From Ylistrum balloti (Eukaryota), in the NCBI RefSeq assembly GCF_031769215.1, contig NW_026782088.1:310001-374000 (forward strand): a stretch of DNA of 64,000 bases. The letters run 5' to 3'. The notes under the pieces were generated by a model that had not been told where the DNA came from, made no database searches, and was given only the letters and a program-made list of their open reading frames with translations. Positions 11,085-52,600 of this stretch are shown piece after piece; position 1 is the first letter of the stretch; every line of letters begins with the position of its first letter. Position numbers and translations under genes: made by a program.

Positions 11085-13504
11085 ATGGATGGTGCCCCAG
11101 AGGGAGAACAAAGAATGCAAAATGATGGAAACCTGCATGCCTCCAATGGGCCTAATTCCATTTCTCATCTCATCATGGCCAGTGCAATAGTGTCTCGAGA
11201 TGTGTCCACTGGTAACTCAGATATCGATGTTACAAACATTGATGACCCCCAAGTCTCACTAGCTGATAATATTCATGCACAACACATGGCCAGTTCAACA
11301 TCTGCAATGGCAGCAGTTCCCCCTCAAATACGGCGTCACTCTGACCCAATGATTTCTGTGGAGCGACAGCCAGTTTCTCAGTCCCCTGGCCAGTCCCCAC
11401 TCCAGTCACGTTTTGCCACCTCTCCCTCCCTGTCTCTGTCAACCCATAGCTCCTCTCCTCCTCCAATCATTATGTCTGATCGAGAATTCTCACACAGCGA
11501 AGATGGCAGCTCCTACATAATCACTGGTGATATGGATGACCCAAGAAAGTATGAACCCATTAACATTGACACAACAGACCATGGTGAGGATGCCACATAT
11601 ACCCTACCAGACTCCTCACCGGAGATGATTGCCTATGACAACGGGACAAAGACACAGTACAAGACTTATAAATGTCGGCTTTGTAATTTCACAGCTACCA
11701 CCTATACACAACTGCAGCTCCACATGCCCAGACATGGAGGTACAGTATTCAAACTGACACAAGTTTAGATATACATTCAAACTTGTGTTAAAGGCCATTT
11801 CTATACAAAGACCACCAAAAATTATTGACATCATTTTTACAACATGTTATTTATTGAAACCTCAAATTTTGACACTATTGAAGTCAGGCATCCCAGTATG
11901 TTGTAGGGAGATGACTGGTAATGCTTAGGTTCATTGTATTTTGCTAAATTTTGTGAATTTTCATTATCATTTCCTTATGATTATTTGTAACCACTATTTG
12001 AGATGTAACAGTTGTAGGTTAATCTGACGACATCAGTAAAACAAGGTTTGGAACTTAACATGATTTTATTTACCCTGTAATTTTAGATGTAATTTGACTT
12101 TCAGGTGTAAAGGCACTGAAATGTCCTCTTTGTGACTATTCAACTAATGACAAGAGCAACTTTCGTAGACATAGAAGACTGCATATCGGCAACAACCCAG
12201 TCAGCGTACTCAAGTGTGAGAAATGTACCTACTCTACAATACTTCCTCGAAAGTTCCGTGAGCACTACAGCCAAGTACACAATGAACAGATTGGTCCAAA
12301 CTACCAATTTCAGACCAGTCCATACAGACCCTCTGGCTACGACACTGCTCAATTTAAGTACAGGCTAGGCCATGTTGACTTGAATCCTGGTCACATCCCC
12401 ACATCCACTGCCCCTCAAAGTATGGCTGCAACCACAGCTCTCCACTCACTTCTAAGAGGAATTCATTCAACACCAGTACACTACACTCATCAACCTGCCC
12501 AACCCCTTCAAGGTCAGTGTTTAGGACAGTACCCAAGCTATGCTGCCCCAGTTAGACGAACAGTTGATGAATCTCACATGGCTTCTAATTACCTTCGATC
12601 CATTGTATCCTCCATTATGAACAATCCTCAGACCGTTTCCATGCCAACACCAAGCAGCACCATATCCTCATCAGGCTTTTACATGGCAGCTGATCCCTCA
12701 CAGCAGCATCAACAACAACAACAACAACAGCAGCATCAACAACAGCAGCAGCAACACATACGTGTAGCACATTCTCCTATACAAGTGGGCATGCAGACAC
12801 TTCAAGGTCATGTCAAGGTGAAAGTTGAGCCCCCTGATCACCCGGACACTCCTGAGACTGCAGATGTGTCCAGTACTGCACCTCCTCCACGACATCAGTT
12901 TTTGTCAGACCAAGAACGTCGGTTAGAGCTGCATCCCTTCTCTCGAAGTTACTCAGAGGTGGAAGATGGTAGCATGGTTATGGAATGTAATGAGGTGGCA
13001 ACATCTGCTGAAATAAGACAAACATTGTCTGCTGACTCTGGCCACTCACAAAGAGGGGACAGGGCAAGTATAGAAGTAAGGACAACAGCCAGTGTGGACG
13101 ACACTGTAAACACCACTGTTAAAATGGAAATGTCCAGTGTAGGCATTCAATGTTCTATACCTATCATCAAAACAGAGTCAAGCATTGTTAGTGACACCCC
13201 ACAAACATTGTCAGCAAGTTGTGTTGAGCGTGGAGTACAGTGTGAGATCATGACATCAGGTCGGTGTTTGAATCAAAGATCTCGTTCGCTGCCAGGAGAG
13301 GCAAGCTTTACAGAGCAGCAAAACTTTCAACTTACAGAGAACAGATGCAATCACTGTGGTATCACGTTTGATGATGAGGTTCTCTTTTCAATTCACATCG
13401 GATGCCACAGTCACACAGATCCATTTGTCTGTAATGTCTGTGGCAAACATTGTGGCAACAAGTATGGCTTTTACTCTCATATAATGAGGGGCCATCACTA
13501 CTGA
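11085..13504 (+). CDS. Ikaros/Hunchback-family C2H2 zinc-finger protein, Pegasus (IKZF5)-like; join(11085..11739,12105..13504), 684 aa
   Basis: The phase-1 intron GGAG|GTACAG...TTTCAG|GTGT joins the two ORFs in frame (2055 nt). N-terminal fingers: YKCRLCNFTATTYTQLQLHMPRH, LKCPLCDYSTNDKSNFRRHRRLH, LKCEKCTYSTILPRKFREHYSQVH. The C-terminal pair CNHCGITFDDEVLFSIHIGCH-SHTDPFVCNVCGKHCGNKYGFYSHIMRGHH is the Ikaros/Hunchback dimerisation-type signature. A 5'UTR acceptor lies at 11068. Confidence 0.9.
12702..12756 (+). repeat. Coding CAA/CAG microsatellite (polyQ with His interruptions)
   Basis: Encodes QQHQQQQQQQQHQQQQQQH in the 12380..13504 ORF. Confidence 0.9.
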
Positions 13505-23340: not shown

Positions 23341-24856
23341 AACATTATGTTTATTTGGTAGTTTTTTTAAATTATTATCTCAGATCCAATTTTGCAGTAC
23401 AAAAGAAAATAGTTGAAAATTTAGTCAAGTGTATAGCAAACCAGAGGATTTGATTGGTAGTTATTCAATATTAATGTGCAACTTGATGACTATAATTTAT
23501 ATATATGTAGTATGAGTTCACATTTCTTAAGTTCTTACCAAAATTTCTTCCTGTTTACTGTTCTGGTAAAGGAATTTTAGAAATACTTGATTCTGTAATT
23601 AAAAAATGATAAATACATTGAATTCTACCATGGTTCCGTTGTTTACAGGAGGCTGTATGATCTGTATGAGTGCAAACATGACATGAAACCTTCTGGTTCT
23701 TGAGTTAAATCTCACTCTAAACTACATCCATTTCATGTCACAAGTACTGACTAATGCCAGCAATTATTAATGTTGGCATGTTGTGTCTCCGATTAAATAG
23801 GCCAAAACTTTCTCTTTTGTTTGGCCTACACGTGCGGTTTAATTAACATGTGGGATATTTTGCTTCACTCGATTATATGTGTTTACCGTTCTGTATGACG
23901 TTACAGTCTACGCTGTACAACCATAGATTTATATTTTAGCTTGTGTCCAGTGTAAGTTGTCTAGACTGGTAATTTATTGTAGATATTTTATGCATTTTTT
24001 ATATAATAAACTATATGTCTTTTTTTACATTTATTCTGTGTCCTTGTTTGTTAGAGTTAACTGTAGCTACGTTTGTCATCTCCATATCTGTTGTCAATGC
24101 TTTGGCCACCATAACTATATGGTGTTGGTCTAAAATCGGTTGGATATGGTAGAAAAGTGAAATATGGACCACAGGAGACTAGTTATGAAGGCTTAGATGA
24201 CTAACAGAATTTTGATTGTCAAGACCACACCTGAACCCCATCAATTGTATTTAGGAAACAGAAACCAGTTCAGCTTATTATTTAAAACTTTCAAATACCG
24301 TCATGTGCCGAGGGATTCTGCACATATCTTATTTCAAATCCTGTGGTCCGTATGATATGTAGGATAGTCACGAAAATATCTCTTCAGTGCAACCAGTATG
24401 ATCAGTATATCAACTAAATATCTCAGGATTCTAAGCAGAGTCGTTGGGAAATAATGATCTCATATTTAACATGAAGTCAACTTTATTGTCATGGACAGAA
24501 CACTTCCTGCGATGTATTATGATAACATCTAAACAGAGATTTCGTCATGTGTTTTATTATGTGAAGATATCACACAATGTGACATACCATATGGTAAACA
24601 CCTCGACAGAGACCTTGTCATGTGGTTAATTGTGTGTAATAGCACATCATGTGATGTACCACGTGATAAACAACACAACAGTGACCTTGTCATGTGGTTA
24701 ATTAAGTGAGGAGATCACGGCATACCGGAACAGATCTAAGCACGTGCACAAGACAGTACATCTGTAGTCACCGACATACAAGTTGTTCCTGGAACAGCCA
24801 AGGTCATCGTGAAGGCTTTTCTTGTCTCCTTTTTAATTGCGCGAAGATCACCTTTA

Positions 24857-25833
24857 TTACAGCTGGCCTTGGCCAATGGATTTCATTCTGCTCCATGGGG
24901 ATCGTATACATAATTTGAGGTAAAGTGCTAGACTGATGTGGGACGTACGATACTTTGCTGGAATGTCGTCGTACACTTCTCCACTGACGTCATATATATG
25001 ACGTAGAAGTACCTAAAGAAGAAAATGAAAGAAACAGCTCTTAGCGGTGCCTGTGAACAGTCGGATCGTTATCCGGTGATTCTGCGCGTGCGGTTTATGA
25101 CAAATGATAAAATTTTACAAAGTGTCTTATGAAGCAGTCGATTTAAGGAGCGCACTCTCACTGGGCGTGCAGAATCACTGTTCAGCATTACGCATGGTAA
25201 TAGCTGACTGAAAAACTAAGGCAAATACTACTTATTCGATGAGACGTCGTTTGATTCTGACCAATATACCAATAACAATAAAGAAATATAGCACCGTATT
25301 TATAATAAATGATTTGTTATATGCATTAATCATGTGATTTAGAGGATACTAAACATTTTTCATAGATAACATTGATTCTAATACCGTTCAAGTGTAAAAT
25401 GCAAACAGTCAGTTGGTTGCTCTCTGACGTTTAAAACATATCAAGCATATTGTTAACATACCCTCATAGCTTTTCTGTCAGGTATGATCGGTATTCTGTC
25501 AACTTTAGATCCTCGAATTAACCCTACTCGCCTTGCTAAATCGACATCTTCATCTTCTAAAAGATACAGTTCATTAGGTTTGCATTCTTTTACAGTTTCA
25601 AATGGTGAATGTCCTATTTCATCGAAAATATCAGAGACCGTCGCGTCTTCAGTATTGTGTTCAGAATCATCTGTTATCGAAATTTCATTTTCTATTGGTA
25701 TTTGTTCATCCGGAATTAGTATCATATCGGCCTCCTTAACAGTATCGTCAGCTGATACGATTTTCTCTTCGTGTAGACTTCTCTTAACGCGTAACGGAAG
25801 TAGTACTCCACTGGCACTTTCGTCAACGTCCAT
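24857..25833 (-). CDS. Uncharacterised ~175-aa protein, head-to-head with SoxH; complement(join(24857..25012,25462..25833))
   Basis: ATG at 25833. The exon ends KAMR|GTATGT (phase 0, donor at 25461). The acceptor has a strong pyrimidine tract (TTTCTTTCATTTTCTTCTTTAG|G at 25013). The second exon reads VLLRHIYDVSGEVYDDIPAKYRTSHISLALYLKLCIRSPWSRMKSIGQGQL* and is followed directly by AATAAA. I recognised no domain. Confidence 0.6.
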
Positions 25834-25839
25834 TTTCAA

Positions 25840-25993
25840 CTGTAAACCGTCTGTACGCGAAATAATTACACAACTAATTGATGACGTTTACTGACAATTT
25901 AATGACGTCATAATGTACGTTTTAATTGTGACGTCACTATCTGGCGTCATTATTCCTAGAACAATCAAACCGTTGATTGTCGTTCCATGACGC
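25840..25993. promoter_or_regulatory. Candidate bidirectional promoter: two CRE octamers and an inverted SOX-motif pair
   Basis: TGACGTCA at 25903-25910 and 25929-25936. ACAATCAA-ACCG-TTGATTGT palindrome at 25961-25980. These lie between the two divergent start codons. Confidence 0.5.
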
Positions 25994-28900
25994 ATGCAAC
26001 ATAGCTTATTGTGCATTGTTAGCGGAACTAAAATGACAGAACAGATGACAAAGAGGACCATTGGAAGCGTGGACCGTGATGTGTCATACCATGAGGATAT
26101 GTTTCGTTCGAAAAAACTGAAAGTGAACTCAGATGAAGGCACTGAACAGACTGCTAAGCAACAACACAATGAGGACCGAAACAACAGCAACTGTCCTGTG
26201 AAAGTAAAGGTAAATGTTTCTGAATGCAACAAACATCCAAAAGTTACTGGTACTGATCCGACTCCATATAGAATTGTTGTTAGCGAGAATCACAAGGACA
26301 GAAATTTTGACGATGAGGCACAAAAAGCATCAACCATACTAAAAAATATAGTGATGGAAAAGATGAATGATAGAATATCTGATTCACAAGAACATTCAAC
26401 ATCAGCTTTTCAAGGAGTTCAGCAACATAATTATCAACCCATGGTACCGTTGACATGCAAAATTCCATTCTCACGCCCAATAGCACCAATACGCTATCTT
26501 CCTGTCCAGAGCAACGTTTATCCACAATTCGTGAGACACAACGCTACTACGGTCGGAAATCTGGCATCACTACCTGCTCAGGTTGGTATGCCAAGAATGG
26601 TTCAACAGCCGGGAAAAACGATGGTCCAGCCAATTCCACCGGTGTCTTCAGTTACGAGAACTTTGCTACCGACATGCGGGGCATTGCCAACAGTTATTCC
26701 AACGTCAACTGGAACAGCCACCCAATCAACAGGAACCATGACGTCGATAAATGATCCTAGTTTGCCAAGTAATGAATACTTCAGCAATATTACTAGCCCG
26801 GCGATTAAAACTACTGTTCAGGTTATGCCTGGTAAGTACAAACATGACATTGATGATATGTATATCTCATACATTACTGTAAACACATATTACTTTAAGC
26901 ATTCATTGGAAAGTGAACGCAAGATATCGAAAATGTATGGTCAGTGTCTTAAATATAAGCTGTGTTTTGGCGAGAGTAAAGAAAGACAGAAGTGGTGAGC
27001 CTCTGGCAAGCGACTTTTGTCTTTCTGTCTCGAGCTTGGTGGAGTACATGTCACAAGTCACGTGTACAGTAACTGTTGTAAAGCTTGATTTAAGAATTTG
27101 TATGTGTAGCTTTACCAGCATCGGAAATAAGACACATAGTGGACTCACGATTTTGGTTTTAAATTTAGAAACTATGATAATAATATCTGAAATCGAAAAC
27201 GTTCTTAAGGATAAACTTTTTTGAGAAGTAAAAAAAAAAAAGTAAATAAGTTATCATTTTTTCTGGTGATAATTTTTGGAAAGGTTGGATTTGAAAAGAA
27301 AAGTAGAAGCAAAAGCATTATATTGTTGCACTACGTTTTTGATACAGGCGTCAGAAAATGTGAAACAGTAAAAAATAAACGTTCACATATTGAGATAAAG
27401 GTGAAGGGGTGGGATGGGGATAACGGAACCTGGTTCGTCAAACCGGGGTGGGTGGGGATAACGGAACCTGGTATCACTTACGGGGGCGTGTGGTGATAAC
27501 GGAACCTGGTATCACTTACCGGGGCGGGTAGTGATAGCGGAACCTGGTATCACATACAGGTGCTGGCTGGGATAATGGGACCTGGTATCACATACCGGGG
27601 TGGGTGGGGATAACGGAACATGGTTCGTCATACCGGGGCGGGTGGGGATAGCGGAACGTTGTATCACATACGGGTGCTGGTGGGGATAGGTGTCAGTTTT
27701 ACCCCCATGGCGGTAGGAGAAAGGGGTACCTGGTACCACAAACTGGGATACCGGGATACTGGAGGATTTATGACCTTAGTTTCCTACTACTTCCAATGCT
27801 TTGCCAAGTGTTTGAAATGTCAGAACCAGCAGCAGTATATCTAAAACTGTCCATGATTAAACACATCGTATGAATGAAATGCTATGTTTTCCACAATACC
27901 AGGCACATCAATGATGTACAAAACCCCAGGCGCAACTTTCAGAAACCGACATGGCAAAGTCAAACGCCCGATGAACGCGTTCATGGTTTGGGCGCGGAAC
28001 TACCGGAGTCGTCTCTCTGAGGAAATGCCACAAGCTTCTAATGCACAAATCAGCGTGCGACTCGGAGAGATATGGGGAAGTATGTCGCTTGCCGAGAAGG
28101 AAAAGTTCTTCAGGGAAGCGGAACGCATCAAGCTGCAACACAACCGAGATTTTCCAGGTAAATAGCTTATTTATCCTTATATATGTCAAAGACTCGGATG
28201 GTTTAAAGTTCAAAGGTCTCATACCCACCAGACATTCTGAGACTTTGTTCCGAAAACTAGATAGTGTAACATTGAAGACAATGCTGCATTTTTTGGAACA
28301 TTTTCTTCAGGTTGGTAATGTCGATAGAATCGAAGTTCTTATAACACAACCAGAAGCAGATTATAGTTTGATGTTTCGATGATTACACGGTCACCTTCAT
28401 CAGACAAATGACCAGTGTGGAGCGTACTAGCACTGATGTACGTTGTGTACGAGATGGTACAGAATCGACAAACTTTTTAGGTTGCACTATAATCCAATGT
28501 ACACCGAGGTTGAAAATAGTGTGACGAGATGGTTAACAGATTATAGACCAAACAAATACACAAGATGGTAACAATGTACTGTAGTCAATTCGACTACCCT
28601 TTGTTTAACACTTGGTCAGAGTTGTGCGAGTCTTATTAAACAAATCCTCAATTTTTTATAGTTTTCATTGATTCAAAATTAAGGATACACATGTATACAT
28701 ACGTATAAAATTAAATCTTTTCCTGATGTACAAAATTGCTATGGGTTAGGAAACCTGAATATTGTTTCTCTCTTTGAGTCGAAGTGACTGAACATCTAGG
28801 AACAAGATGGCGTTTATATATATTAATTATGCTATATCATAGGCAAGTTGTCTTTTAAAGATATATGTAGCGTTTTGAAATGCTCAGTAAAACACTATTT

Positions 28901-31900
28901 ATTTTTAATTTCCATACTCCAGGTTGGGTATACCAACCCAAACAGAAGAAAGTCCAAATTGAGACCCAGCATGACCGCCTTTGGGCGAGATTTGGATCAA
29001 ACTCATGCAAGGAACATCCGACAGAAATGGCAACCAATCCTCCACATGAAGTAGCAACTCATCAAATTGTCACCCCTACTCCAGTGACCGTGTACCCAAA
29101 AACTTCCATTGTCAACACATCCAATGTATGCGTGACGTCTCCACTTCCTTCCTTTTCCCAGCTGACACAGACAGTTACTGGTCCCAAACCAATATTATCC
29201 ATGGAGACAGAAGGACATCAGACGTCGGGGACTAGAGGCAGGGAGTCATTTGACAAAGAATCGATCGGGAGGCCAACAGCCTTCAAGTCAGTGAGCAGCA
29301 GTCAAACACCGGTCGTTACTAGACAAGTTCTATCCAAGAAGGAACATGGCCCAACACTTCAGTTAACATCATCTGCAGTATGCCAATCTCCACTGAAGAT
29401 GACAGCTTCTTCTTTGACAACTAGAGGAAGTCCTGCTAGCGGGAATGTTAGGTCACTGTCCAGTGCAGTGACGGGATGTCCCTCCCCTAAAGGTCGACCG
29501 CCAAGTATTTCCCGTAGAATTCCTCGTAAGTCATATGAATATGATATATAAACCTATGGTAAGGACGTAAAAGAGCTTTGGAGATAGGATTGATAAAACC
29601 TGCTAAAACAATATCTGAAATCTAGTATGATTCTTTGTCATGTGCTTAGTTGCAAAAAATCTTATTCTTTGCTTGAAATATTTCTGTCTACGTCGCACAG
29701 AAATAAGATTTTACCATCGAACATGTTCAGATGGATTGATATTCGTCTCCAGATCAGTGACTGATTTGTTTTACGAGTGTAATAAACGTAAATAGATTAG
29801 TCATGTCGATACACATATAGCTCACAACATTAGTTACCGAAAATTGACATTTAAAAGTATATATATACAAACTTTCCTCGTACCGCAAAAGTCACATTGT
29901 ATCAGTATTAAATGATAGTTAATATTATATCGATGGTACTCAATTTAGTTTCAAATAGTAAAATTAATCTTATATCAAATGGTAGCCAAGTTTACCTAAT
30001 ATAAATAGAGTGTGTTTATGAAAAACTATGCATGCGGTTGCAACAAAATTTTGAAGTGGGACATTAAAACTGCACAATGTAAGGCACGTGCTAATTGCAT
30101 GCACATTTAGTGAAACACTTATGTAGGCCAAAGGTCACGGTCAAAACAATCGGTACCACCAGAAAGGTCTTGTGACAAGGAACACACTTGCCAAATATGA
30201 AAGCCACACCTCTGATGTTGCAATAGTTATGGTCAATGTTTAACTTTTTTTCAAATGTAGGTCAAAGGCCACGATCAAGTTCATATGGTGAAAACTTATG
30301 GTACTATCAGAAAAGTTTTGTCACAAGGAACACACATGCCAAAAAGGAAAGCCCTACCTCTTACGGTGAAATATGTTTGGAGAAGGTTAAAGTTGACTAC
30401 AGACAAACAAATAGACAAACAGACAACATAAAATCAATATTCACCGATCTATCCTCTTCCTGATTTTAACCACAGCTAAGTTTTTTTTTGCAATATAACT
30501 GTATGAACACACTGAATTATCTGTTTTTTTAGATGCACCAGAGATGCTGATTTCCACACAACGGTCCTACAGGGAAGCGATCTTCACCAAGAGCAATTCC
30601 ATTAGTCCACCCAAAACCAAGTCTGTTTCCTCTGGGTAAGCCATAGTGAACTATTCCGAAATACTCTCGTTAAAAAAATACCACTCAGGTTCCCAATCAT
30701 TTTGATAAGAAAACATAAGTTCTGCGATACTTTGTTTTCATTTTCAATTTAAGATTTATTATATAAAGCTGTTTACAGACCCATTTTGAGTACTTCCACT
30801 TCGGACACGATGCTACAGAAAGCAAACGTCACGCCTCTGACAACGACCAGCGACGTCAGAGTGACGGGATCACATAGGGGTAGCGCGGATCCCGTTGACG
30901 AGTTGTGGCCGTTCCCTCTCCCCTCAGTAGAACAGACGCATCACGTGGATGTGCTATATGATGGTAAGACGTTAACCACTATAACGATCAGTGGCGTAGC
31001 AATGTTTTAAGAGTGTATGCTTTCATGAGAGAGTCCAGGAGCCAAGCCCCTGTGGAAGAAAGAATATCAAGGTCAATATTTTCCGTATGTTTCCTGCTTC
31101 TATAGCATTTGATAAAAGTTCATAAACAACTATATGAAACTTTGCCATCTTGAAGCAAATCCCATATTCGTGAGAAAGTGTTTTTAGACAATATTCATCC
31201 TATGGTTGAATGGCATCAAATCAGGCCATAGTCAGCGGTCAGAGTCTAAACAAAGTACCACATCTTTGAAGCAGCTTCTTAATGTCAAGCACACCTCTAT
31301 TTGTGATGACTGATGTGGTCTATTTTTAGATCATCTCCGTTATGAGCGCGACAGTGGCACGGGATTCATTGATCCCTACAACCCGTTTTATTACGACGGC
31401 AGTTATGACGAAACAAGGTCAGGGTTACAGGTCGACGTAAACAGGTGAGTCACGTGTTTACCCGAATATTATTGGTCGTTTGCTTATGCTATTGATTATT
31501 GTATTGGTTTTGAAACGGTGTCATTATTTAGTGACATTGTGATGGTGAATTACATGTCAATATTATACTTTTAAAACTGTGTTATTTTTAAATCGAAGGG
31601 ACTGAAGTGGTTATCTCGTGTATTTTTAACGATAGTACCTATATATAGGCCTATTTGTCAAGGGTCGTAGGTCATATCTGTTTTTAGATAAGACTGACCA
31701 TGGGTCAGTGAGCATCCACGCATTTCTCTCCCGTACAAGTCGTAGTAGAGATAGGACGTTCTCGAATAGTTTCCTGGAATTTTCTGATTCGATGTGTGGT
31801 AGTGGCGCGTAATCTCACGTACGGGAAGTCTTCCCAAGACCCTCTTCATTTGTGAAGAGATTTTTTTTCATAAACGTATTAAGAGAGCATGTGGCGTTAG

Positions 31901-33355
31901 CGTTTTGTTTCATCACTTGTTATTGAAATTTATTAATATCTGCCTTGTTTAGCCAAAGTATCAGCATTCATTTAATGTGTAAACAGCTAGTAGCATCAAC
32001 ATTTGTACAGTGAATGGGTTCAGTGTCACAACCATTTAGATAAGTTTACTCCAAGACGTCCACTTCTAGAACAATGTCACAACCATTTAAATATGTTTAC
32101 TCACAGAATAGTGTTTCAAAGCTATTGTAAACATATCACAGAAAAAAATTAGCAATTATTTTATAATACGTTCCTCCTCCTTCTCAGCATAATGTCATTA
32201 TCATCGTTCTCGCTTTCTTCACAATGCTTGTTGAAATTTTCAAAATGTCTGTTTGGAAATTTAACGAGTTTCCATGTAATCTGGGACTAATAGATAAGTT
32301 CTGTGCATTTTCCATGTAGACTTACAAGATATTTTTTTCTCAGTTGGCAGAAATATTTGAACTACACAAAGATGCAAAGCGAATCGGAGGACAAGACAAA
32401 TCTGACCAAGTACTTTCCTACGCCGCCACCGCTTAGCAATAGCAGCAGCAGCTGGTGTGACCAGATTCCCACTATTACTGACCATAGTGTCCAGCAAGAA
32501 GTCACTCGTCCTAAACAGACTGGAAATGGATCGGACCACGAACCACGCCGCACATCCTCCGAATCTTGTTTTGCGTCTTCTCTGACTAGTGCTATAAACG
32601 TACTTGATGACGTCAGTAATAGCACCGTCGACTACGCCGACGGAAATCACCGTGGTTACCAGCAGAGCAACACATCACAGCCATCAGCAGACGTCGCAGA
32701 TCTGCAGTATCAAAACAATACTCTTCAAGCTTTAGATCTCAGTTCGGGTACTCGAGCACAAACAAGTGCGTCAAATATTGTTTACCTAGGACAGGAAACC
32801 GCTCATATAGGGTCTGGCGATGGTGTCGGATCTATTCCTATGGAGGCGGGAAGTCCACCAGGTAAATCTGAAGATTCGAGACCATTGAAGAAGAGAATAG
32901 AGCGATACAGGAAGGAATTCATCAACGGAAGGCCTTATGTCACAGCAGGTGATGTTCCGACGGGAACTTATCTCGAAGATGTGGTGTTCCTTACATCCCC
33001 AGAGAAGGCAGCAGAAGAAGAGGTTTTGTCTGGTAACTTGTCAAGGCATGCAAATGGGTATACCTCCACCGATCCAACTAGAGACCCTATCACCTCTCAA
33101 GGGATCGTAATAGATGTAGCACATGACTTTGTCAAATCGCTTAAATCGGGCGCAGTTATCACCGATCTTACTCCCGTAAATATGACAAACGTGAAGTCAA
33201 TCCATATTGATGCCAAAGCTGTTGAACGTGCAACAAACCAGAACCGAGACAACAGTACAGAAAGAATGAGAGATACCGAAAAAGGTTTAGAAGTTGTGAA
33301 TTACACTGAACCTTGTAAAGTCAATATAAAGGAAGAAGTGTTGGGTGATCACTAA
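25994..33355 (+). CDS. SOX30: SoxH / SOX30-like HMG-box transcription factor; join(25994..26831,27903..28157,28923..29525,30533..30635,30779..30963,31330..31444,32344..33355), 1036 aa
   Basis: All six introns are GT-AG and phase-compatible (total 3111 nt). The HMG box VKRPMNAFMVWARNYRSRLSEEMPQASNAQISVRLGEIWGSMSLAEKEKFFREAERIKLQHNRDFPG|WVYQPKQKK ends in the FPGWVYQP motif characteristic of SOX30/group H. AATAAA at 33558. An alternative start ATG lies at 26033. Confidence 0.85.
27405..27700. repeat. G-rich degenerate ~36-bp tandem repeat in SoxH intron 1
   Basis: Recurring GGGATAACGGAACCTGGTATCAC...GGGGTGGGT units. Confidence 0.8.
29990..30420. repeat. Interspersed non-autonomous repeat with two internal units (GGTCAAAGGTCA...AAAGGTCTTGTGACAAGGAACACAC...GAAAGCC) in SoxH intron 3
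   Basis: Two related internal copies at ~30130-30215 and ~30260-30360. The resemblance to mollusc Helentron-like elements is from recall. Confidence 0.5.
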
Positions 33356-50000: not shown

Positions 50001-52600
50001 TCCATCTCCTGATACCAAAATGATCAAGAAATGGATTACTTCACTCGCCTTTTATTTACTAATGAGGTAACAGAGGGTATAACCATATAAAGCTAGTAGG
50101 GACAAGATGATGCTGGTGTTACTTCAAATTCAAAGTTCTATTTATATAAAAGACAAAACAATACAGGAAACTGAAAAAACTATCACTACTTTGCAACAAT
50201 TTACAAGAAACAGATAAAGAATTTAGGTAATTTGACGCATTAATATTCTTCCAAGGAGGGTCAATGTACAGGAACTGACCTTGAAACTGATCACTATGGG
50301 ATGTGTAGTAGTTTCATTACTGGAGATGACCTTGACACTGGTCACAGAGGTCTATGTACTGGAACTGACCCTGACACTGATCACTATAAGGTTTATGTTG
50401 TGGTGCCTACCTTGATACCGAGAGTCTATCTACTGTAACTGAAATGGACAGCTCACTAGAGTTTATTTCTGCAGCTGACCTTGACACAGATCACTAATGT
50501 TTATTACTGGAGCTGGTGCATTGACTTAGATACATTTTGGTTTACAGACCTTTGATAGAATTTCAAACTATTTTCAGACAATAACAGACAACCAATTAAA
50601 TACAGGTCCTTTATCACTCATCTAGCTTTGTTCGACTGAAATTAATTCATTCAATCCAAAGAAAAAGGATTTTTTTAAGGTTTATATTGATTTCTTAATT
50701 GGGTCCAATACCTATACCCCAGAGTGTCAACAAAACCACTGATACAAGTTTCCTTCACCAAAGAATTCTTCAGATATAACTGGGACAGAAACCTGATATT
50801 CTTATAGACAAAATAAGGATTTTAAAGAATTTGCACCTACTTACCCAATAATGCCTCAAAAATCCTGCCCCAGGGGGCCAAGACCAATCGTTTATGTAAA
50901 TTTGATTCCCTTCACACAGGAATGGTTTAGACTAAATATGGGCCAAATCAAATCATTCCTATAGCAGAAGTAATATCTTACAGAAATTGTTCTATTTCCC
51001 CTTTTAGACTTGCCCCGCTTGGCCGAGAGGGGGCTGAAACCCATCGTATATACAAAATTGCTTCCCTTCCTCAAGAATGCTTCAGGTCAAATTTAGGCAA
51101 CAACTGCTAAGTTTTTCAAGACAAGTAGCAATTTGTTTAAAAAAAAAGCTGACAAACCAGGTAAGCTAATAATTATTTTTCATTTTTCTCAGAGAGTTGA
51201 AAAGCCATACAAAAATCTGGAAAGCCATGGAATTAATTCATTAAGATATATCAGGTATGCACTGTATCTGCAGCACAGTTGTATTAGGATCATGCGTAAC
51301 ATTTGCTTGAAATTTAATTCATCCAGATATAAAAGATATTAAATGATTAAGTATTACCTCTAGGAAATAATTCTTTGAAAATTCTTTCTCCAATGCATTT
51401 TTCCAGGTCTCCCCAAAGTTGACGACAAGACCTTTAGAGTTGGCAGTTTTAGAATGAAGCTTTGCTATGGCTTTTATTCTATTCTGTTCCATTCGGGCCT
51501 TCTGTTCTGGTGACAAAGCTGTGGATGTACCATCTGCACTTGACTTTGTTTCTGGAGTCAATTCTTGCTTCTCTGTTTTGGTCTTCTTAGATGGTGTAAT
51601 ATTCTACAATTTGAACAAGATATTGACAAACAAAAGAAACCTAACCATCCAATTTTAAGTAATATAGTAAATATTTACAAATTTTGTTGAAGTAACAGCC
51701 ATTATAGTAAGTTAAAGATGAACAACTGTTTTATAAGACAACTCTGTCAAATAACCACTATATGTAGTAATGATCACTTTGACAAGGGAAGTCAATTAAG
51801 TACTGCGGAGGAGGAAAGGTATGGAAAAGGAATACATAGCACCAAAGGAGTCATGTTTGGACAGTGTCTCTTTAAACCATTGGAGTCTGCAATCATATCA
51901 ATGACAGGTCAGAAGCATTCCCACTTCAATAGAAGATGCCTTTAAAGTCATATTGATATTTATTCCTGGAGTTTTTGGCCCTAGAGTCACTTTTTTTCTA
52001 TTGTGCAGCTCTGAAATGTATGAAAATATTTCTAAGAAAGCAAATAGGAAGTTTGAGGGAAGCTGGTCAATTTGAAAGTGATCGGCATGGACTTGGATAT
52101 GGGTAAGGCAAAAATACTAGTTATTTTTCAAAGATCCAAGAAAACACCAACATTTTGAATCCGTCTCTGTTATATTGTTATTACATATATATATATATAT
52201 CCTTTTGTGTTATCACACATGACGTCATGGCGACATGGAGTTATCTACACGGTGTTGTCACCAAGGAAATTCAGAATACATAATTATATTTATATCAGTC
52301 CAATTAAATGTTTCAAGAATACTTGCAAAATAATTATGTCACAAAATACATAGATCTAATTTCGAATGCATATTACAAATGAATGAACTAGTCACGATTT
52401 TGAGTGTGTGCAGTACTTAGTTTGATTATAAAGTTGATTTTATTTTGACTATTGTGTGTTTACTTCGACGACCCAATGTGCCGCTGATGTGTGCCTGATG
52501 TAAACATCAATACCTGTTCGTCCTGTGTCATTTCTGTTGAACGCTTATTGGGTGTTGGTCCAGTCTTAAAAAATGCTGAAATTTTAGATTGACCTATCAT
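38015..52600 (-). CDS. UNG: Uracil-DNA glycosylase (family 1); complement(join(38015..38167,46505..46683,47187..47275,48062..48104,49119..49173,49711..49806,51358..51603,52514..52600)), 315 aa
   Basis: Eight phase-compatible GT-AG exons (948 nt). The N-terminal PIP-box-like [11 protein letters not shown] resembles human UNG2 MIGQKTLYSFF. It also has the RPA-binding-type helix [13 protein letters not shown], catalytic motif A GQDPYH, GLCFSV, HPGHG, GVLLLN, VFILWG and motif [12 protein letters not shown]. Confidence 0.96.
38630..40125. repeat. 23-24-bp minisatellite (ATAGGTGTTCACACATACATTTTT) in the last UNG intron
   Basis: About 60 units. It explains the ORFs at 38787, 39115 and 39162. Confidence 0.95.
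41040..41620. repeat. 82-bp compound tandem repeat with 30-bp subunits
   Basis: TCCCCAGGACTGTATCAGTGTTAAACAAAATC recurs at an 82-bp period (41161, 41243) and in shorter units. Confidence 0.88.
42181..44187 (+). CDS. Mab-21/cGAS-like nucleotidyltransferase-fold protein (cGLR type) with C-terminal TPR-like helices, 668 aa; nested antisense in UNG intron 7
   Basis: Uninterrupted 2007-nt ORF with a GCCATGG start and an upstream acceptor TTTGTTACAG at 42166. Mab-21 family motifs: [63 protein letters not shown]-like segments [18 protein letters not shown] and [19 protein letters not shown]. Confidence 0.88.
   Translation: MACSCRELSILLSTYLDRRVIGTQRNINNRRKVMAIEETIHNKGQNISTFLCGDASDGTNVPGLNSDILIVYNDVMVLSPEHNVPPTDKTTLTINEDDSRPGYVALQLTQTGKMCSTVLQNSFVHVGNAVFVSSDIFQEQTTIHHSDMGLPGKSNVPRSTQIKTDYLHSFQCNSWPKRAKEWERRIRLSGWPSQTLIDRIVQKGCHLVPIRERFFMDKTSQWKISFASAERFLIHSFSNVQLKVYCLMKYFFEEIRDTLTKITGEDSILPSDSLKTVMFFALENAHQNVWQEQNLFYCFWFCFNILLSFVKTGHLPNYFIPANNMFLGKVNHQNRKKLFHILNYFHKNKLLCLSFGKFFQPPLLERICNSKTQKELKCSQHVSEVEYQDDASIFFGSVSVSNQCTSMRPAMSLLMKSQSEVEEAIAYGYTLRNISLFAQHDYCHHIAGSSHNKTRYKRTRKCRHQIILCAAMGTCTELLYLATFYFLTGNYSKSLEICRNVLSQPSYYTEGTTDLPPKQRISYLQEYCGKGYTLIYKLKKTLTKSIGFGKESLFLPCLQPEVVKCPSGLYIPPLPYTIFLSFLCCKELGDIKGYEAALHSLIVVKYDDLQGAHRHWIVHTLLGLCYETLDDHTRAVRAYMESAQTKTRYHDFNPAPERIEALQRLDTG
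44158..44410 (+). repeat. Three degenerate tandem copies of the Mab-21 gene stop-codon region
   Basis: CTCTACAGAGGT(T/C)(A/G)GACAC(T/C)(G/T)GATAGCAGAA occurs at ~44162, ~44243 and ~44338. Confidence 0.8.
45555..45920. repeat. Degenerate ~30-bp tandem repeat (TTTCAGTTCAATGTTGAT core)
   Basis: Recurring core. It explains the ORF at 45539. Confidence 0.8.
47348..47850. repeat. 52-bp minisatellite in UNG intron 5
   Basis: CTGCAGTGGTCCACAGTCTGATCCCAATCAGTAGAGTGTAAGATTAGTAAAT occurs about 6 times, with a partial copy at ~47790-47850. Confidence 0.92.
48495..49135 (-). repeat. Minisatellite containing copies of the UNG exon-4 3' end and splice donor
   Basis: Repeated GACTTACCATGAGCTTGTT is the reverse complement of exon 4 AACAAGCTCATG|GTAAGTC. 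Confidence 0.88.
49375..49710 (-). repeat. 65-bp tandem repeat starting at the UNG exon-3 splice donor
   Basis: ATGTAAACTTAC (minus strand GTAAGTTTACAT) occurs six times. The period is 65 bp (49442, 49507, 49572), with one shorter unit. Confidence 0.9.
50750..51090 (-). repeat. Interspersed repeat in UNG intron 2 (same family as 1-330 and 35585-36330)
   Basis: CCCTTC(A/C)...AAG(A/G)AT(G/T)CTTCAG...AAAT(A/T)TGG motifs, inverted relative to 35585-36330. Confidence 0.45.

What the first reader, a model, noticed from the sequence alone, without database searches (positions are those of the whole stretch)
24857..25839. Unrecognised two-exon gene head-to-head with SoxH/SOX30
Seen: a 124-codon acidic exon (MDVDESASG...DRKAMR) with a consensus GTATGT donor splices in phase 0 to a 52-codon exon. 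That exon has a very strong acceptor and AATAAA at its stop. The ORF track shows only the first exon. Its ATG is 160 bp from the SoxH ATG. The C-terminal half (LLEDEDVDLARRVGLIRGSKVDRIPIIPDRKAMRVLLRHIYDVSGEVYDDIP) looks like a folded module, but I cannot assign it. Recalled knowledge: human SOX30 is also head-to-head with a small testis-expressed uncharacterised gene (C5orf52). I see no evidence of homology here. Inference: this is a co-regulated, probably male-germline partner of SoxH, either an ancient divergent pair or a convergent arrangement.
Basis: partly seen in the sequence, partly recalled or inferred. Interest (0 to 1): 0.7.

Follow-up and report, generated by a model that had tools for sequence, protein, structure and literature searches.

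The report
Conserved small gene sharing SoxH promoter
A small two-exon gene of unknown family sits back to back with the sperm-development regulator SoxH in this scallop. It shares with SoxH a roughly 200-base promoter that has been kept in scallops, pearl oysters and true oysters, which makes it a good but untested candidate sperm-development gene.

Summary
The two exons (25833-25462 and 25012-24860, minus strand), the GTATGT donor, the strong acceptor and the stop overlapping AATAAA are all there. Together the exons give exactly NCBI's 175-aa "uncharacterized LOC132548619" of Ylistrum balloti, which is a scallop, not an oyster.

The gene is real:
- It is single-copy.
- Orthologues occur in four scallops, Pinctada, Saccostrea, Magallana and Mytilus.
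- All share an identical phase-0 intron position.
- dN/dS is 0.07-0.16 in the conserved C-terminal module.
- Three oyster runs hold spliced contigs.

In seven species of three orders the gene starts 134-223 bp from SoxH. Mytilus lacks this pairing. The intergenic DNA is 82% identical among scallops although synonymous sites are near saturation. It carries invariant CRE boxes and Sox-core motifs. A published testis-enriched ATAC peak and "SoxH promoter" fragment in Argopecten covers this whole spacer plus the first 114 bp of the small gene.

No Pfam family, solved structure or fold match was found, and no relative outside pteriomorph bivalves. Nothing supports homology to C5orf52.

No RNA data exist for this species, so expression, and male-germline expression in particular, is inferred, not shown. 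The scan had not noted this gene before.

The parts
25462..25833 (-). Coding exon 1, 124 codons. Residues 1-88 form an acidic, predicted-disordered tail. The last 36 codons begin the conserved module.
25013..25461 (-). Intron of 449 bp (GTATGT...TTTAG), phase 0, lying after the residues A-M-R. Its position is identical in all 8 species examined.
24857..25012 (-). Coding exon 2, 51 codons plus the TAA stop. It holds the second half of the conserved module, the most constrained part of the protein.
24853..24858 (-). AATAAA overlapping the stop codon. It is a possible poly(A) signal, but its use is not shown.
25834..26032 (.). 199-bp spacer between the two conserved ATGs, read as a shared bidirectional promoter. 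It is 82% identical among 4 scallops.
25929..25936 (.). Full CRE palindrome TGACGTCA, invariant in the 4 scallops. With the half-CRE at 25945-25949 it forms the ATGACG...AGTGACG block that is also kept in Pinctada and Saccostrea.
25903..25910 (.). Second full CRE, TGACGTCA. The other scallops keep TGACGTC here.
25961..25980 (.). Perfect inverted repeat ACAATCAA-CGGT-TTGATTGT, that is, two Sox-core motifs facing each other. It is invariant in three scallops and differs at one base in Argopecten.
26008..26019 (.). ACAATGCACAAT, two tandem Sox cores just upstream of the SoxH ATG. Invariant in the 4 scallops.
26033..33355 (+). The SoxH (Sox30-type) gene, the divergent partner. Its first coding exon starts at 26033 and the HMG box starts in the exon at 27884-28162. 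The last exon is the ORF ending at 33355. Exon boundaries were not refined.
   Evidence: PMC13219418

Best explanation
This is a real protein-coding gene, NCBI's uncharacterized LOC132548619 of Ylistrum balloti. It founds a so far undescribed protein family that I could detect only in pteriomorph bivalves (scallops, pearl oysters, true oysters, mussels).

The family is defined by a C-terminal module of about 75 residues. In the model this module is a short helix followed by a confident helix-loop-helix core with invariant Pro, His, Gly, Tyr, Asp and Cys positions. A phase-0 intron splits it at the same place in every species. The acidic, disordered N-terminal tail varies in length and evolves faster.

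The gene is transcribed divergently from SoxH. The two share a promoter of about 200 bp packed with conserved CRE boxes and Sox-core motifs.

Inferred, not shown: the shared promoter opens in spermatids, so the small protein is made together with SoxH. There it probably acts as a small protein-binding or oligomerising helical factor in spermiogenesis. The Sox motifs may allow SoxH to feed back on both genes.
For: Gene reality:
- The exons match NCBI model P0001 exactly.
- The gene is single-copy in its own genome.
- The ORF is intact in an independent DNA run, with one N87D difference.
- Orthologues exist in Pecten, Mizuhopecten, Argopecten, Pinctada, two Saccostrea, two Magallana and three Mytilus species.
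- The intron position and phase are identical in all 8 loci.
- dN/dS is 0.07-0.16 in the module and 0.21-0.55 in the tail, at dS 0.6-1.9.
- Three oyster contigs from different runs join exon 1 to exon 2 exactly at the predicted junction.

Pairing:
- An HMG-box gene starts 134-223 bp away on the opposite strand in six other species.
- The Argopecten neighbour is the published 1,010-aa AiSoxH.
- The window gene is collinear with AiSoxH.

Promoter:
- The spacer is 82% identical among scallops.
- The tandem CRE block is also kept in Pinctada and Saccostrea, and CRE-like boxes occur in Magallana.
- TGACGTCA occurs 6 times in the window against 0.61 expected.
- The spacer holds 7 half-CREs and 6 Sox cores, against window means of 0.23 and 0.91 per 199 bp.

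Testis link:
- AiSoxH is testis-specific and expressed in spermatids and spermatozoa.
- A testis-enriched ATAC peak lies 1-324 bp upstream of the AiSoxH ATG and has promoter activity (PMC13219418).
- In L010 that interval is 9791-10114. It covers the whole 210-bp spacer plus 114 bp of the small gene's CDS.

Fold:
- In the module-only AF2 model the core has pLDDT 88-94.
Against: - There is no RNA evidence from this species. The only run holding the locus is DNA.
- The tissue of the three oyster runs with spliced contigs is unknown.
- The Argopecten paper never mentions the neighbour, so its co-expression has not been measured.
- Mytilus keeps the gene without SoxH beside it and without CREs. 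The protein therefore does not depend on the pairing.
A CRE alone does not imply testis expression.
- The proposed biochemical role rests only on a small helical model with no significant structural neighbour.
Confidence: 0.6

Rival explanations
1. The gene is real and conserved but not specific to the male germline. It is a broadly expressed small gene that merely abuts SoxH in a compact region. The conserved spacer would then serve mainly one of the two genes.
For: - Spliced transcripts were assembled in three unrelated oyster runs of unknown tissue.
- Mytilus keeps the gene next to an IBR-domain gene with no CREs.
- CRE is a general promoter element, seen at other places in this window.
Against: - With a spacer of about 200 bp and both ATGs inside or next to one testis-enriched ATAC peak in Argopecten, independent regulation is hard to arrange.
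- The adjacency has been kept in seven species of three orders, while the flanking genes on the far side differ.
Confidence: 0.25
2. It is the bivalve orthologue of vertebrate C5orf52, so SOX30 and its partner would form an ancient bilaterian head-to-head unit.
For: Small, fast-evolving proteins can drift beyond detection by sequence.
Against: - Exhaustive phmmer against 1.84 billion representatives found only bivalve proteins, plus one repeat-inflated fish hit worth 20 bits per unit.
- Two profile searches found only bivalves.
- None of the 9 members touches any Pfam family at E<=10.
- PF17666 (DUF5528) does not hit this locus in a six-frame search of the genome. I recall PF17666 as the C5orf52 family but could not verify that.
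Confidence: 0.05
3. It is a by-product of divergent transcription from the SoxH promoter: an upstream antisense RNA whose ORF is incidental.
For: The transcript starts inside the SoxH promoter region. No domain or fold could be assigned.
Against: - dN/dS is 0.07-0.16 in the module.
- The ORF and the intron phase are kept across four orders.
- The gene is retained in Mytilus away from SoxH.
Confidence: 0.02
4. It is a domesticated fragment of a mobile element or a virus.
For: The Atlas language-model neighbours include DUF6589 clusters, but at a score of 0.82, which is chance level.
Against: - The gene is single-copy in the genome.
- It sits at a syntenic position in all species.
- It has no Pfam match.
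Confidence: 0.03

Closest known systems
The 'testis-enriched promoter' of Argopecten irradians SoxH (Zhang et al., Commun Biol 2026, PMC13219418)
   Same: It is the orthologous DNA. The 1-324 bp fragment upstream of the AiSoxH ATG contains the spacer that aligns at 82% identity with window 25834-26032. It was shown to be more open in testis than in ovary and to drive a reporter.
   Different: The paper treats it as a one-directional SoxH promoter. It does not mention the divergent gene, whose first 38 codons lie inside the cloned fragment, and it does not mention the CRE and Sox-core motifs.
Vertebrate SOX30 with its head-to-head neighbour C5orf52 (recalled knowledge, not verified here)
   Same: A small uncharacterised gene is divergently paired with the SoxH/Sox30 orthologue.
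   Different: No sequence, profile or family similarity was found. The bivalve family could not be traced outside Pteriomorphia.
CRE-driven post-meiotic promoters of mammals (CREM-dependent genes such as those for protamines and transition proteins; established knowledge)
   Same: CRE boxes lie within about 100 bp of the start in a compact promoter with no evident TATA box, beside a gene expressed in spermatids.
   Different: No CREB or CREM binding was tested. CREs are also common at other promoters in this genome. This promoter serves two genes and also carries Sox motifs.
Conserved bidirectional gene pairs with spacers under 1 kb (a general class)
   Same: Divergent orientation, a short conserved spacer, and an arrangement maintained across long evolutionary distance.
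   Different: One partner is a lineage-restricted orphan protein. The pair is broken exactly at the spacer in Mytilus.

Membership tests
C5orf52 / DUF5528 (PF17666; the equation of the two is from memory) | Sequence match to the family profile | tested here: not met
   No member of alignment A2 hits any Pfam family at E<=10. A six-frame search of the whole genome with PF17666 gives three sub-threshold hits on other contigs and none at this locus.
C5orf52 / DUF5528 (PF17666; the equation of the two is from memory) | Detectable vertebrate relatives | tested here: not met
   phmmer against 1.84 billion representatives gave only bivalves plus one repeat-inflated fish protein. Profile searches gave only bivalves.
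C5orf52 / DUF5528 (PF17666; the equation of the two is from memory) | Head-to-head position next to the Sox30 orthologue | tested here: met
   This holds on the bivalve side. The vertebrate side is recalled only.
Conserved bidirectional-promoter gene pair | Divergent genes with starts less than 1 kb apart | tested here: met
   The ATG-to-ATG spacer is 199 bp here and 134-223 bp in six other species.
Conserved bidirectional-promoter gene pair | Arrangement and spacer sequence conserved between species | tested here: met
   The spacer is 82% identical in 4 scallops, against dS of 0.6-1.9 in the adjacent coding sequence. The CRE block is shared with Pinctada and Saccostrea. Mytilus is the exception.
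Conserved bidirectional-promoter gene pair | Co-expression of the two genes | not testable with these tools
   No RNA run exists for this species. The only indirect evidence is the testis-enriched ATAC peak covering both starts in Argopecten (together).
SoxH / Sox30 (identity of the neighbouring gene) | Sox-type HMG box and orthology to a characterised SoxH | tested here: met
   HMG_box match at E=4e-20. SOX30 structure 7JJK is among the top PDB hits. The gene is collinear with AiSoxH across its exons, with 84% identity in the HMG exon. AiSoxH was placed in group H by the authors' phylogeny.
CREB/CREM-regulated promoter | Consensus CRE (TGACGTCA) close to the start sites | tested here: met
   Two full and three further half CREs lie within 120 bp of the small gene's ATG, and they are conserved.
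CREB/CREM-regulated promoter | Binding and activation by a CREB-family factor | not testable with these tools
   This needs ChIP or DAP-seq, or reporter mutagenesis.

The most novel reading that the evidence does not exclude
The small protein is a dedicated partner or modulator of SoxH, and the pair is the bivalve form of an ancient Sox30-plus-small-neighbour unit that vertebrates keep as SOX30 and C5orf52. On this reading the partner has diverged beyond recognition by sequence, and the shared CRE/Sox promoter is the conserved core of a post-meiotic switch.
Probability: 0.07. Interest if true: 0.75.

Novelty: new member of a known kind. Interest (0 to 1): 0.5.

Why it matters
SoxH/Sox30 is the best-supported regulator of spermiogenesis in bivalves and has been proposed as a target for fertility control in farmed scallops. 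This work shows three things.
- The published "SoxH promoter" is a bidirectional promoter that also heads a conserved orphan gene.
- That promoter has been conserved across three bivalve orders.
- It contains discrete, testable elements: two CREs and a palindromic pair of Sox cores.

This yields a new candidate spermiogenesis gene, a caution for anyone using or editing that promoter, and a compact model for how a germline bidirectional promoter is built in molluscs. The protein itself defines a family with no Pfam entry and no structural neighbour.

Tried and rejected
Searches that assigned no family or fold:
- Pfam on the single exons, on P0001 and on 9 orthologues gave nothing.
- Profile searches of PDB sequences gave nothing. 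The best hits were E=1.4 and E=0.11.
- The ESM Atlas lookup by features and by structure gave only chance-level rows.
- Foldseek against the PDB gave no hit at E<=0.001 for either the full model or the module model.
- The exhaustive VIA search gave only generic helical hairpins for the full model (Z<=6.5, below the noise level for helical proteins). The module model reached a best Z of 4.4.
- The Atlas shape search gave nothing consistent.

RNA evidence in this species:
- The one run found is DNA contigs that include the intron.

Literature:
- No paper holds any of the LOC or XP identifiers of the orthologues. None holds DUF5528 or the run id SRR16709591.
- The supplements of one oyster gonad transcriptome paper do not list the gene.
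- The 15 papers that mention C5orf52 looked uninformative by title and abstract, and I did not read them.

Rejected leads:
- The fish protein P0008 (E=5e-5) is a six-fold repeat, with each unit matching at only 20 bits.
- The bacterial promoter and terminator scan is irrelevant for a eukaryotic locus.
- The look-up of encoding contigs does not serve this genome's own record.

- Whole-protein searches and folds used the database record P0001 returned.
- dN/dS was summed exon by exon.

Full report
**What is in the sequence**

The gene lies on the minus strand.
- An ATG at 25833 opens a 124-codon exon that ends at 25462 with AGG|GTATGT.
- After a 449-bp intron, a long pyrimidine tract and TTTAG|G open a second exon at 25012 in phase 0.
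- That exon runs for 51 codons to TAA at 24859-24857, which overlaps an AATAAA.
- The first 87 residues carry a net charge of -16. The remainder is mildly basic.
- A word search with exon 1 alone returned one protein, P0001. NCBI lists it as "uncharacterized protein LOC132548619 [Ylistrum balloti]", 175 aa.
- The sequence of P0001 is exactly exon 1 followed by exon 2.

The animal is a scallop, not an oyster. All whole-protein steps used the database record P0001, and the selection analysis was summed exon by exon.

**Is the gene real?**

Yes.
- It is single-copy in its own genome.
- The one public run that holds the locus is DNA. Its contig includes the intron, so it says nothing about splicing. 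It differs at 10 positions over 3 kb, and the ORF is intact with one substitution, N87D.
- An exhaustive phmmer search of 1.84 billion representatives found Pecten maximus (61% identity, E=2e-53), Pinctada imbricata, Saccostrea echinata, Mytilus and Magallana gigas.
- Profile searches added Mizuhopecten yessoensis, Argopecten irradians, Saccostrea cucullata, Magallana angulata and many oyster contigs.
- In all eight loci I could read, the coding sequence has two exons split in phase 0 after A-M-[R/K/S], inside the most conserved stretch, with GT...AG borders.
- Among the four scallops, dN/dS is 0.07-0.16 for the module (residues 89-163) and 0.21-0.55 for the acidic tail, at dS 0.6-1.9.
- Three oyster contigs from three different runs read straight from the end of exon 1 into exon 2 at the predicted junction. 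They are L008 from SRR16709591, L012 from SRR14803155 and L013 from SRR13374883. L013 carries 60 exon-1 codons behind a sequencing adapter.

Neither is met, although the junction is seen in oysters and not in this species.

**The pairing with SoxH**

- The divergent neighbour has a Sox-type HMG box.
- It is collinear, exon by exon, with the Argopecten gene in L010.
- That Argopecten gene matches the published AiSoxH in length (1,010 aa) and in span.
- The SoxH start conserved in three other scallops aligns with the ATG at 26033, not 25994. The spacer is therefore 199 bp.
- The orthologue of the small gene starts 134-223 bp from an HMG-box gene on the opposite strand in Pecten, Mizuhopecten, Argopecten, Pinctada, Saccostrea and Magallana angulata.
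- In two Mytilus assemblies the upstream neighbour is an IBR-domain gene 755 bp away, and no HMG box lies within 10 kb.
- The downstream RING gene is shared by Mytilus and the oysters, so the break falls at the spacer.
- A C2H2 zinc-finger gene lies tail-to-tail downstream here (11085-13504). The same is seen in Argopecten and Magallana. In Pecten a gene of similar size and position lies there but has no Pfam hit on record.

**The spacer**

- Among the four scallops the spacer is 82% identical, although synonymous sites next door are close to saturation.
- The invariant blocks are:
  - two CREs (TGACGTCA at 25929-25936; TGACGTCA here and TGACGTC in the others at 25903-25910);
  - further half-CREs;
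  - a perfect inverted repeat of two Sox cores (ACAATCAA-CGGT-TTGATTGT, 25961-25980);
  - ACAATGCACAAT next to the SoxH ATG.
- The tandem block ATGACG...AGTGACG is also present in Pinctada and Saccostrea. CRE-like boxes are present in Magallana, and none in Mytilus.
- TGACGTCA occurs 6 times in the window against 0.61 expected.
- The spacer's 7 half-CREs and 6 Sox cores fall in the top 0.2% and 1.8% of 199-bp windows.

**Link to the testis**

Zhang et al. 2026 (PMC13219418) report the following.
- AiSoxH is testis-specific and is expressed in spermatids and spermatozoa.
- Its knock-down impairs spermiogenesis.
- A fragment 1-324 bp upstream of its ATG is 2.76-fold more open in testis than in ovary and has promoter activity.

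In L010 that fragment is 9791-10114. It covers the whole 210-bp spacer plus the first 114 bp of the small gene's coding sequence. The paper does not contain the words bidirectional, neighbor, head-to-head or uncharacterized. This is the best available evidence that the small gene's start lies in chromatin that opens in the testis. It is indirect, and it comes from another scallop.

**What the protein is**

- No Pfam family matches any of nine orthologues at E<=10.
- No PDB sequence matches.
- AlphaFold2 with the orthologue alignment gives a disordered tail for residues 1-89. For the module it gives a short helix followed by two longer helices.
- Folded alone, the module has mean pLDDT 70 and 88-94 in the core, which corresponds to residues about 116-160 of P0001.
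- Foldseek, the exhaustive VIA search and the Atlas shape search return only generic helical hairpins below the stated noise level.
- The invariant residues are P118, M123, L127, H129, G135, Y138, D140, P142, H149, L152, A153, Y155, L156, K157 and C159.

I therefore read the protein as a small helical protein-binding or oligomerising module with a variable acidic tail. That reading is inference only.

**The C5orf52 idea**

- Only bivalves are found by phmmer and by two profile searches.
- The single fish hit is a six-fold repeat worth 20 bits per unit.
- PF17666 (DUF5528) does not touch this locus in a six-frame search of the genome. I recall PF17666 as the C5orf52 family but could not confirm that.
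- I could not fetch a C5orf52 sequence by reference, so no direct profile-profile comparison was run.

**Verdict**

- Shown: a selected gene, a pairing conserved in three orders (Pectinida, Pteriida, Ostreida), and a shared, strongly constrained promoter.
- Inferred: male-germline co-expression and any molecular role.
- Unsupported: kinship with the vertebrate SOX30 neighbour.

The scan's earlier notes do not cover this gene.

Noticed in passing
window 24985-24992 (exon 2): A third full CRE, TGACGTCA, lies inside the coding sequence, in the codons for Y-D-V-S/T. The same codons, TAT GAC GTC A, are kept in all four scallops and in Pinctada, although synonymous sites are near saturation. This could be chance or a second constraint.
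   Followed up: partly
window 32608, 33478, 52220: Three more perfect CRE palindromes occur in the window. One lies in the last SoxH exon, one about 120 bp past the SoxH stop and one at 52220. Their roles are unknown.
   Followed up: no
The conserved start is 26033.
   Followed up: yes
L006 and L007 (Mytilus), 9245-10000: In Mytilus the synteny break falls exactly between the small gene and SoxH. An IBR-domain gene takes the head-to-head place, the spacer grows to 755 bp, it carries a poly-G run and it has no full CRE.
   Followed up: partly
window 11085-13504 (+): A C2H2 zinc-finger gene lies tail-to-tail downstream of the small gene. A similar gene lies in the same place in Argopecten and Magallana angulata. 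A gene of similar size and position in Pecten has no Pfam hit on record.
   Followed up: partly
P0007 (UniProt K1RTS8, Magallana gigas) and L011 (M. angulata isoform X1): The old M. gigas model has a wrong C-terminus compared with XP_011415856. The M. angulata gene range spans 31 kb across two other genes. Both look like annotation artefacts.
   Followed up: no
window 25575: A second individual's DNA (run X1) carries T>C on the plus strand. This changes Asn87 to Asp, the residue found at that position in the other scallops.
   Followed up: yes
G000:C938:169389-169583: This is the best genome-wide hit to PF17666 (DUF5528). It scores E=0.01, below the cut-off, and lies inside a 449-aa open frame on another contig.
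   Followed up: no
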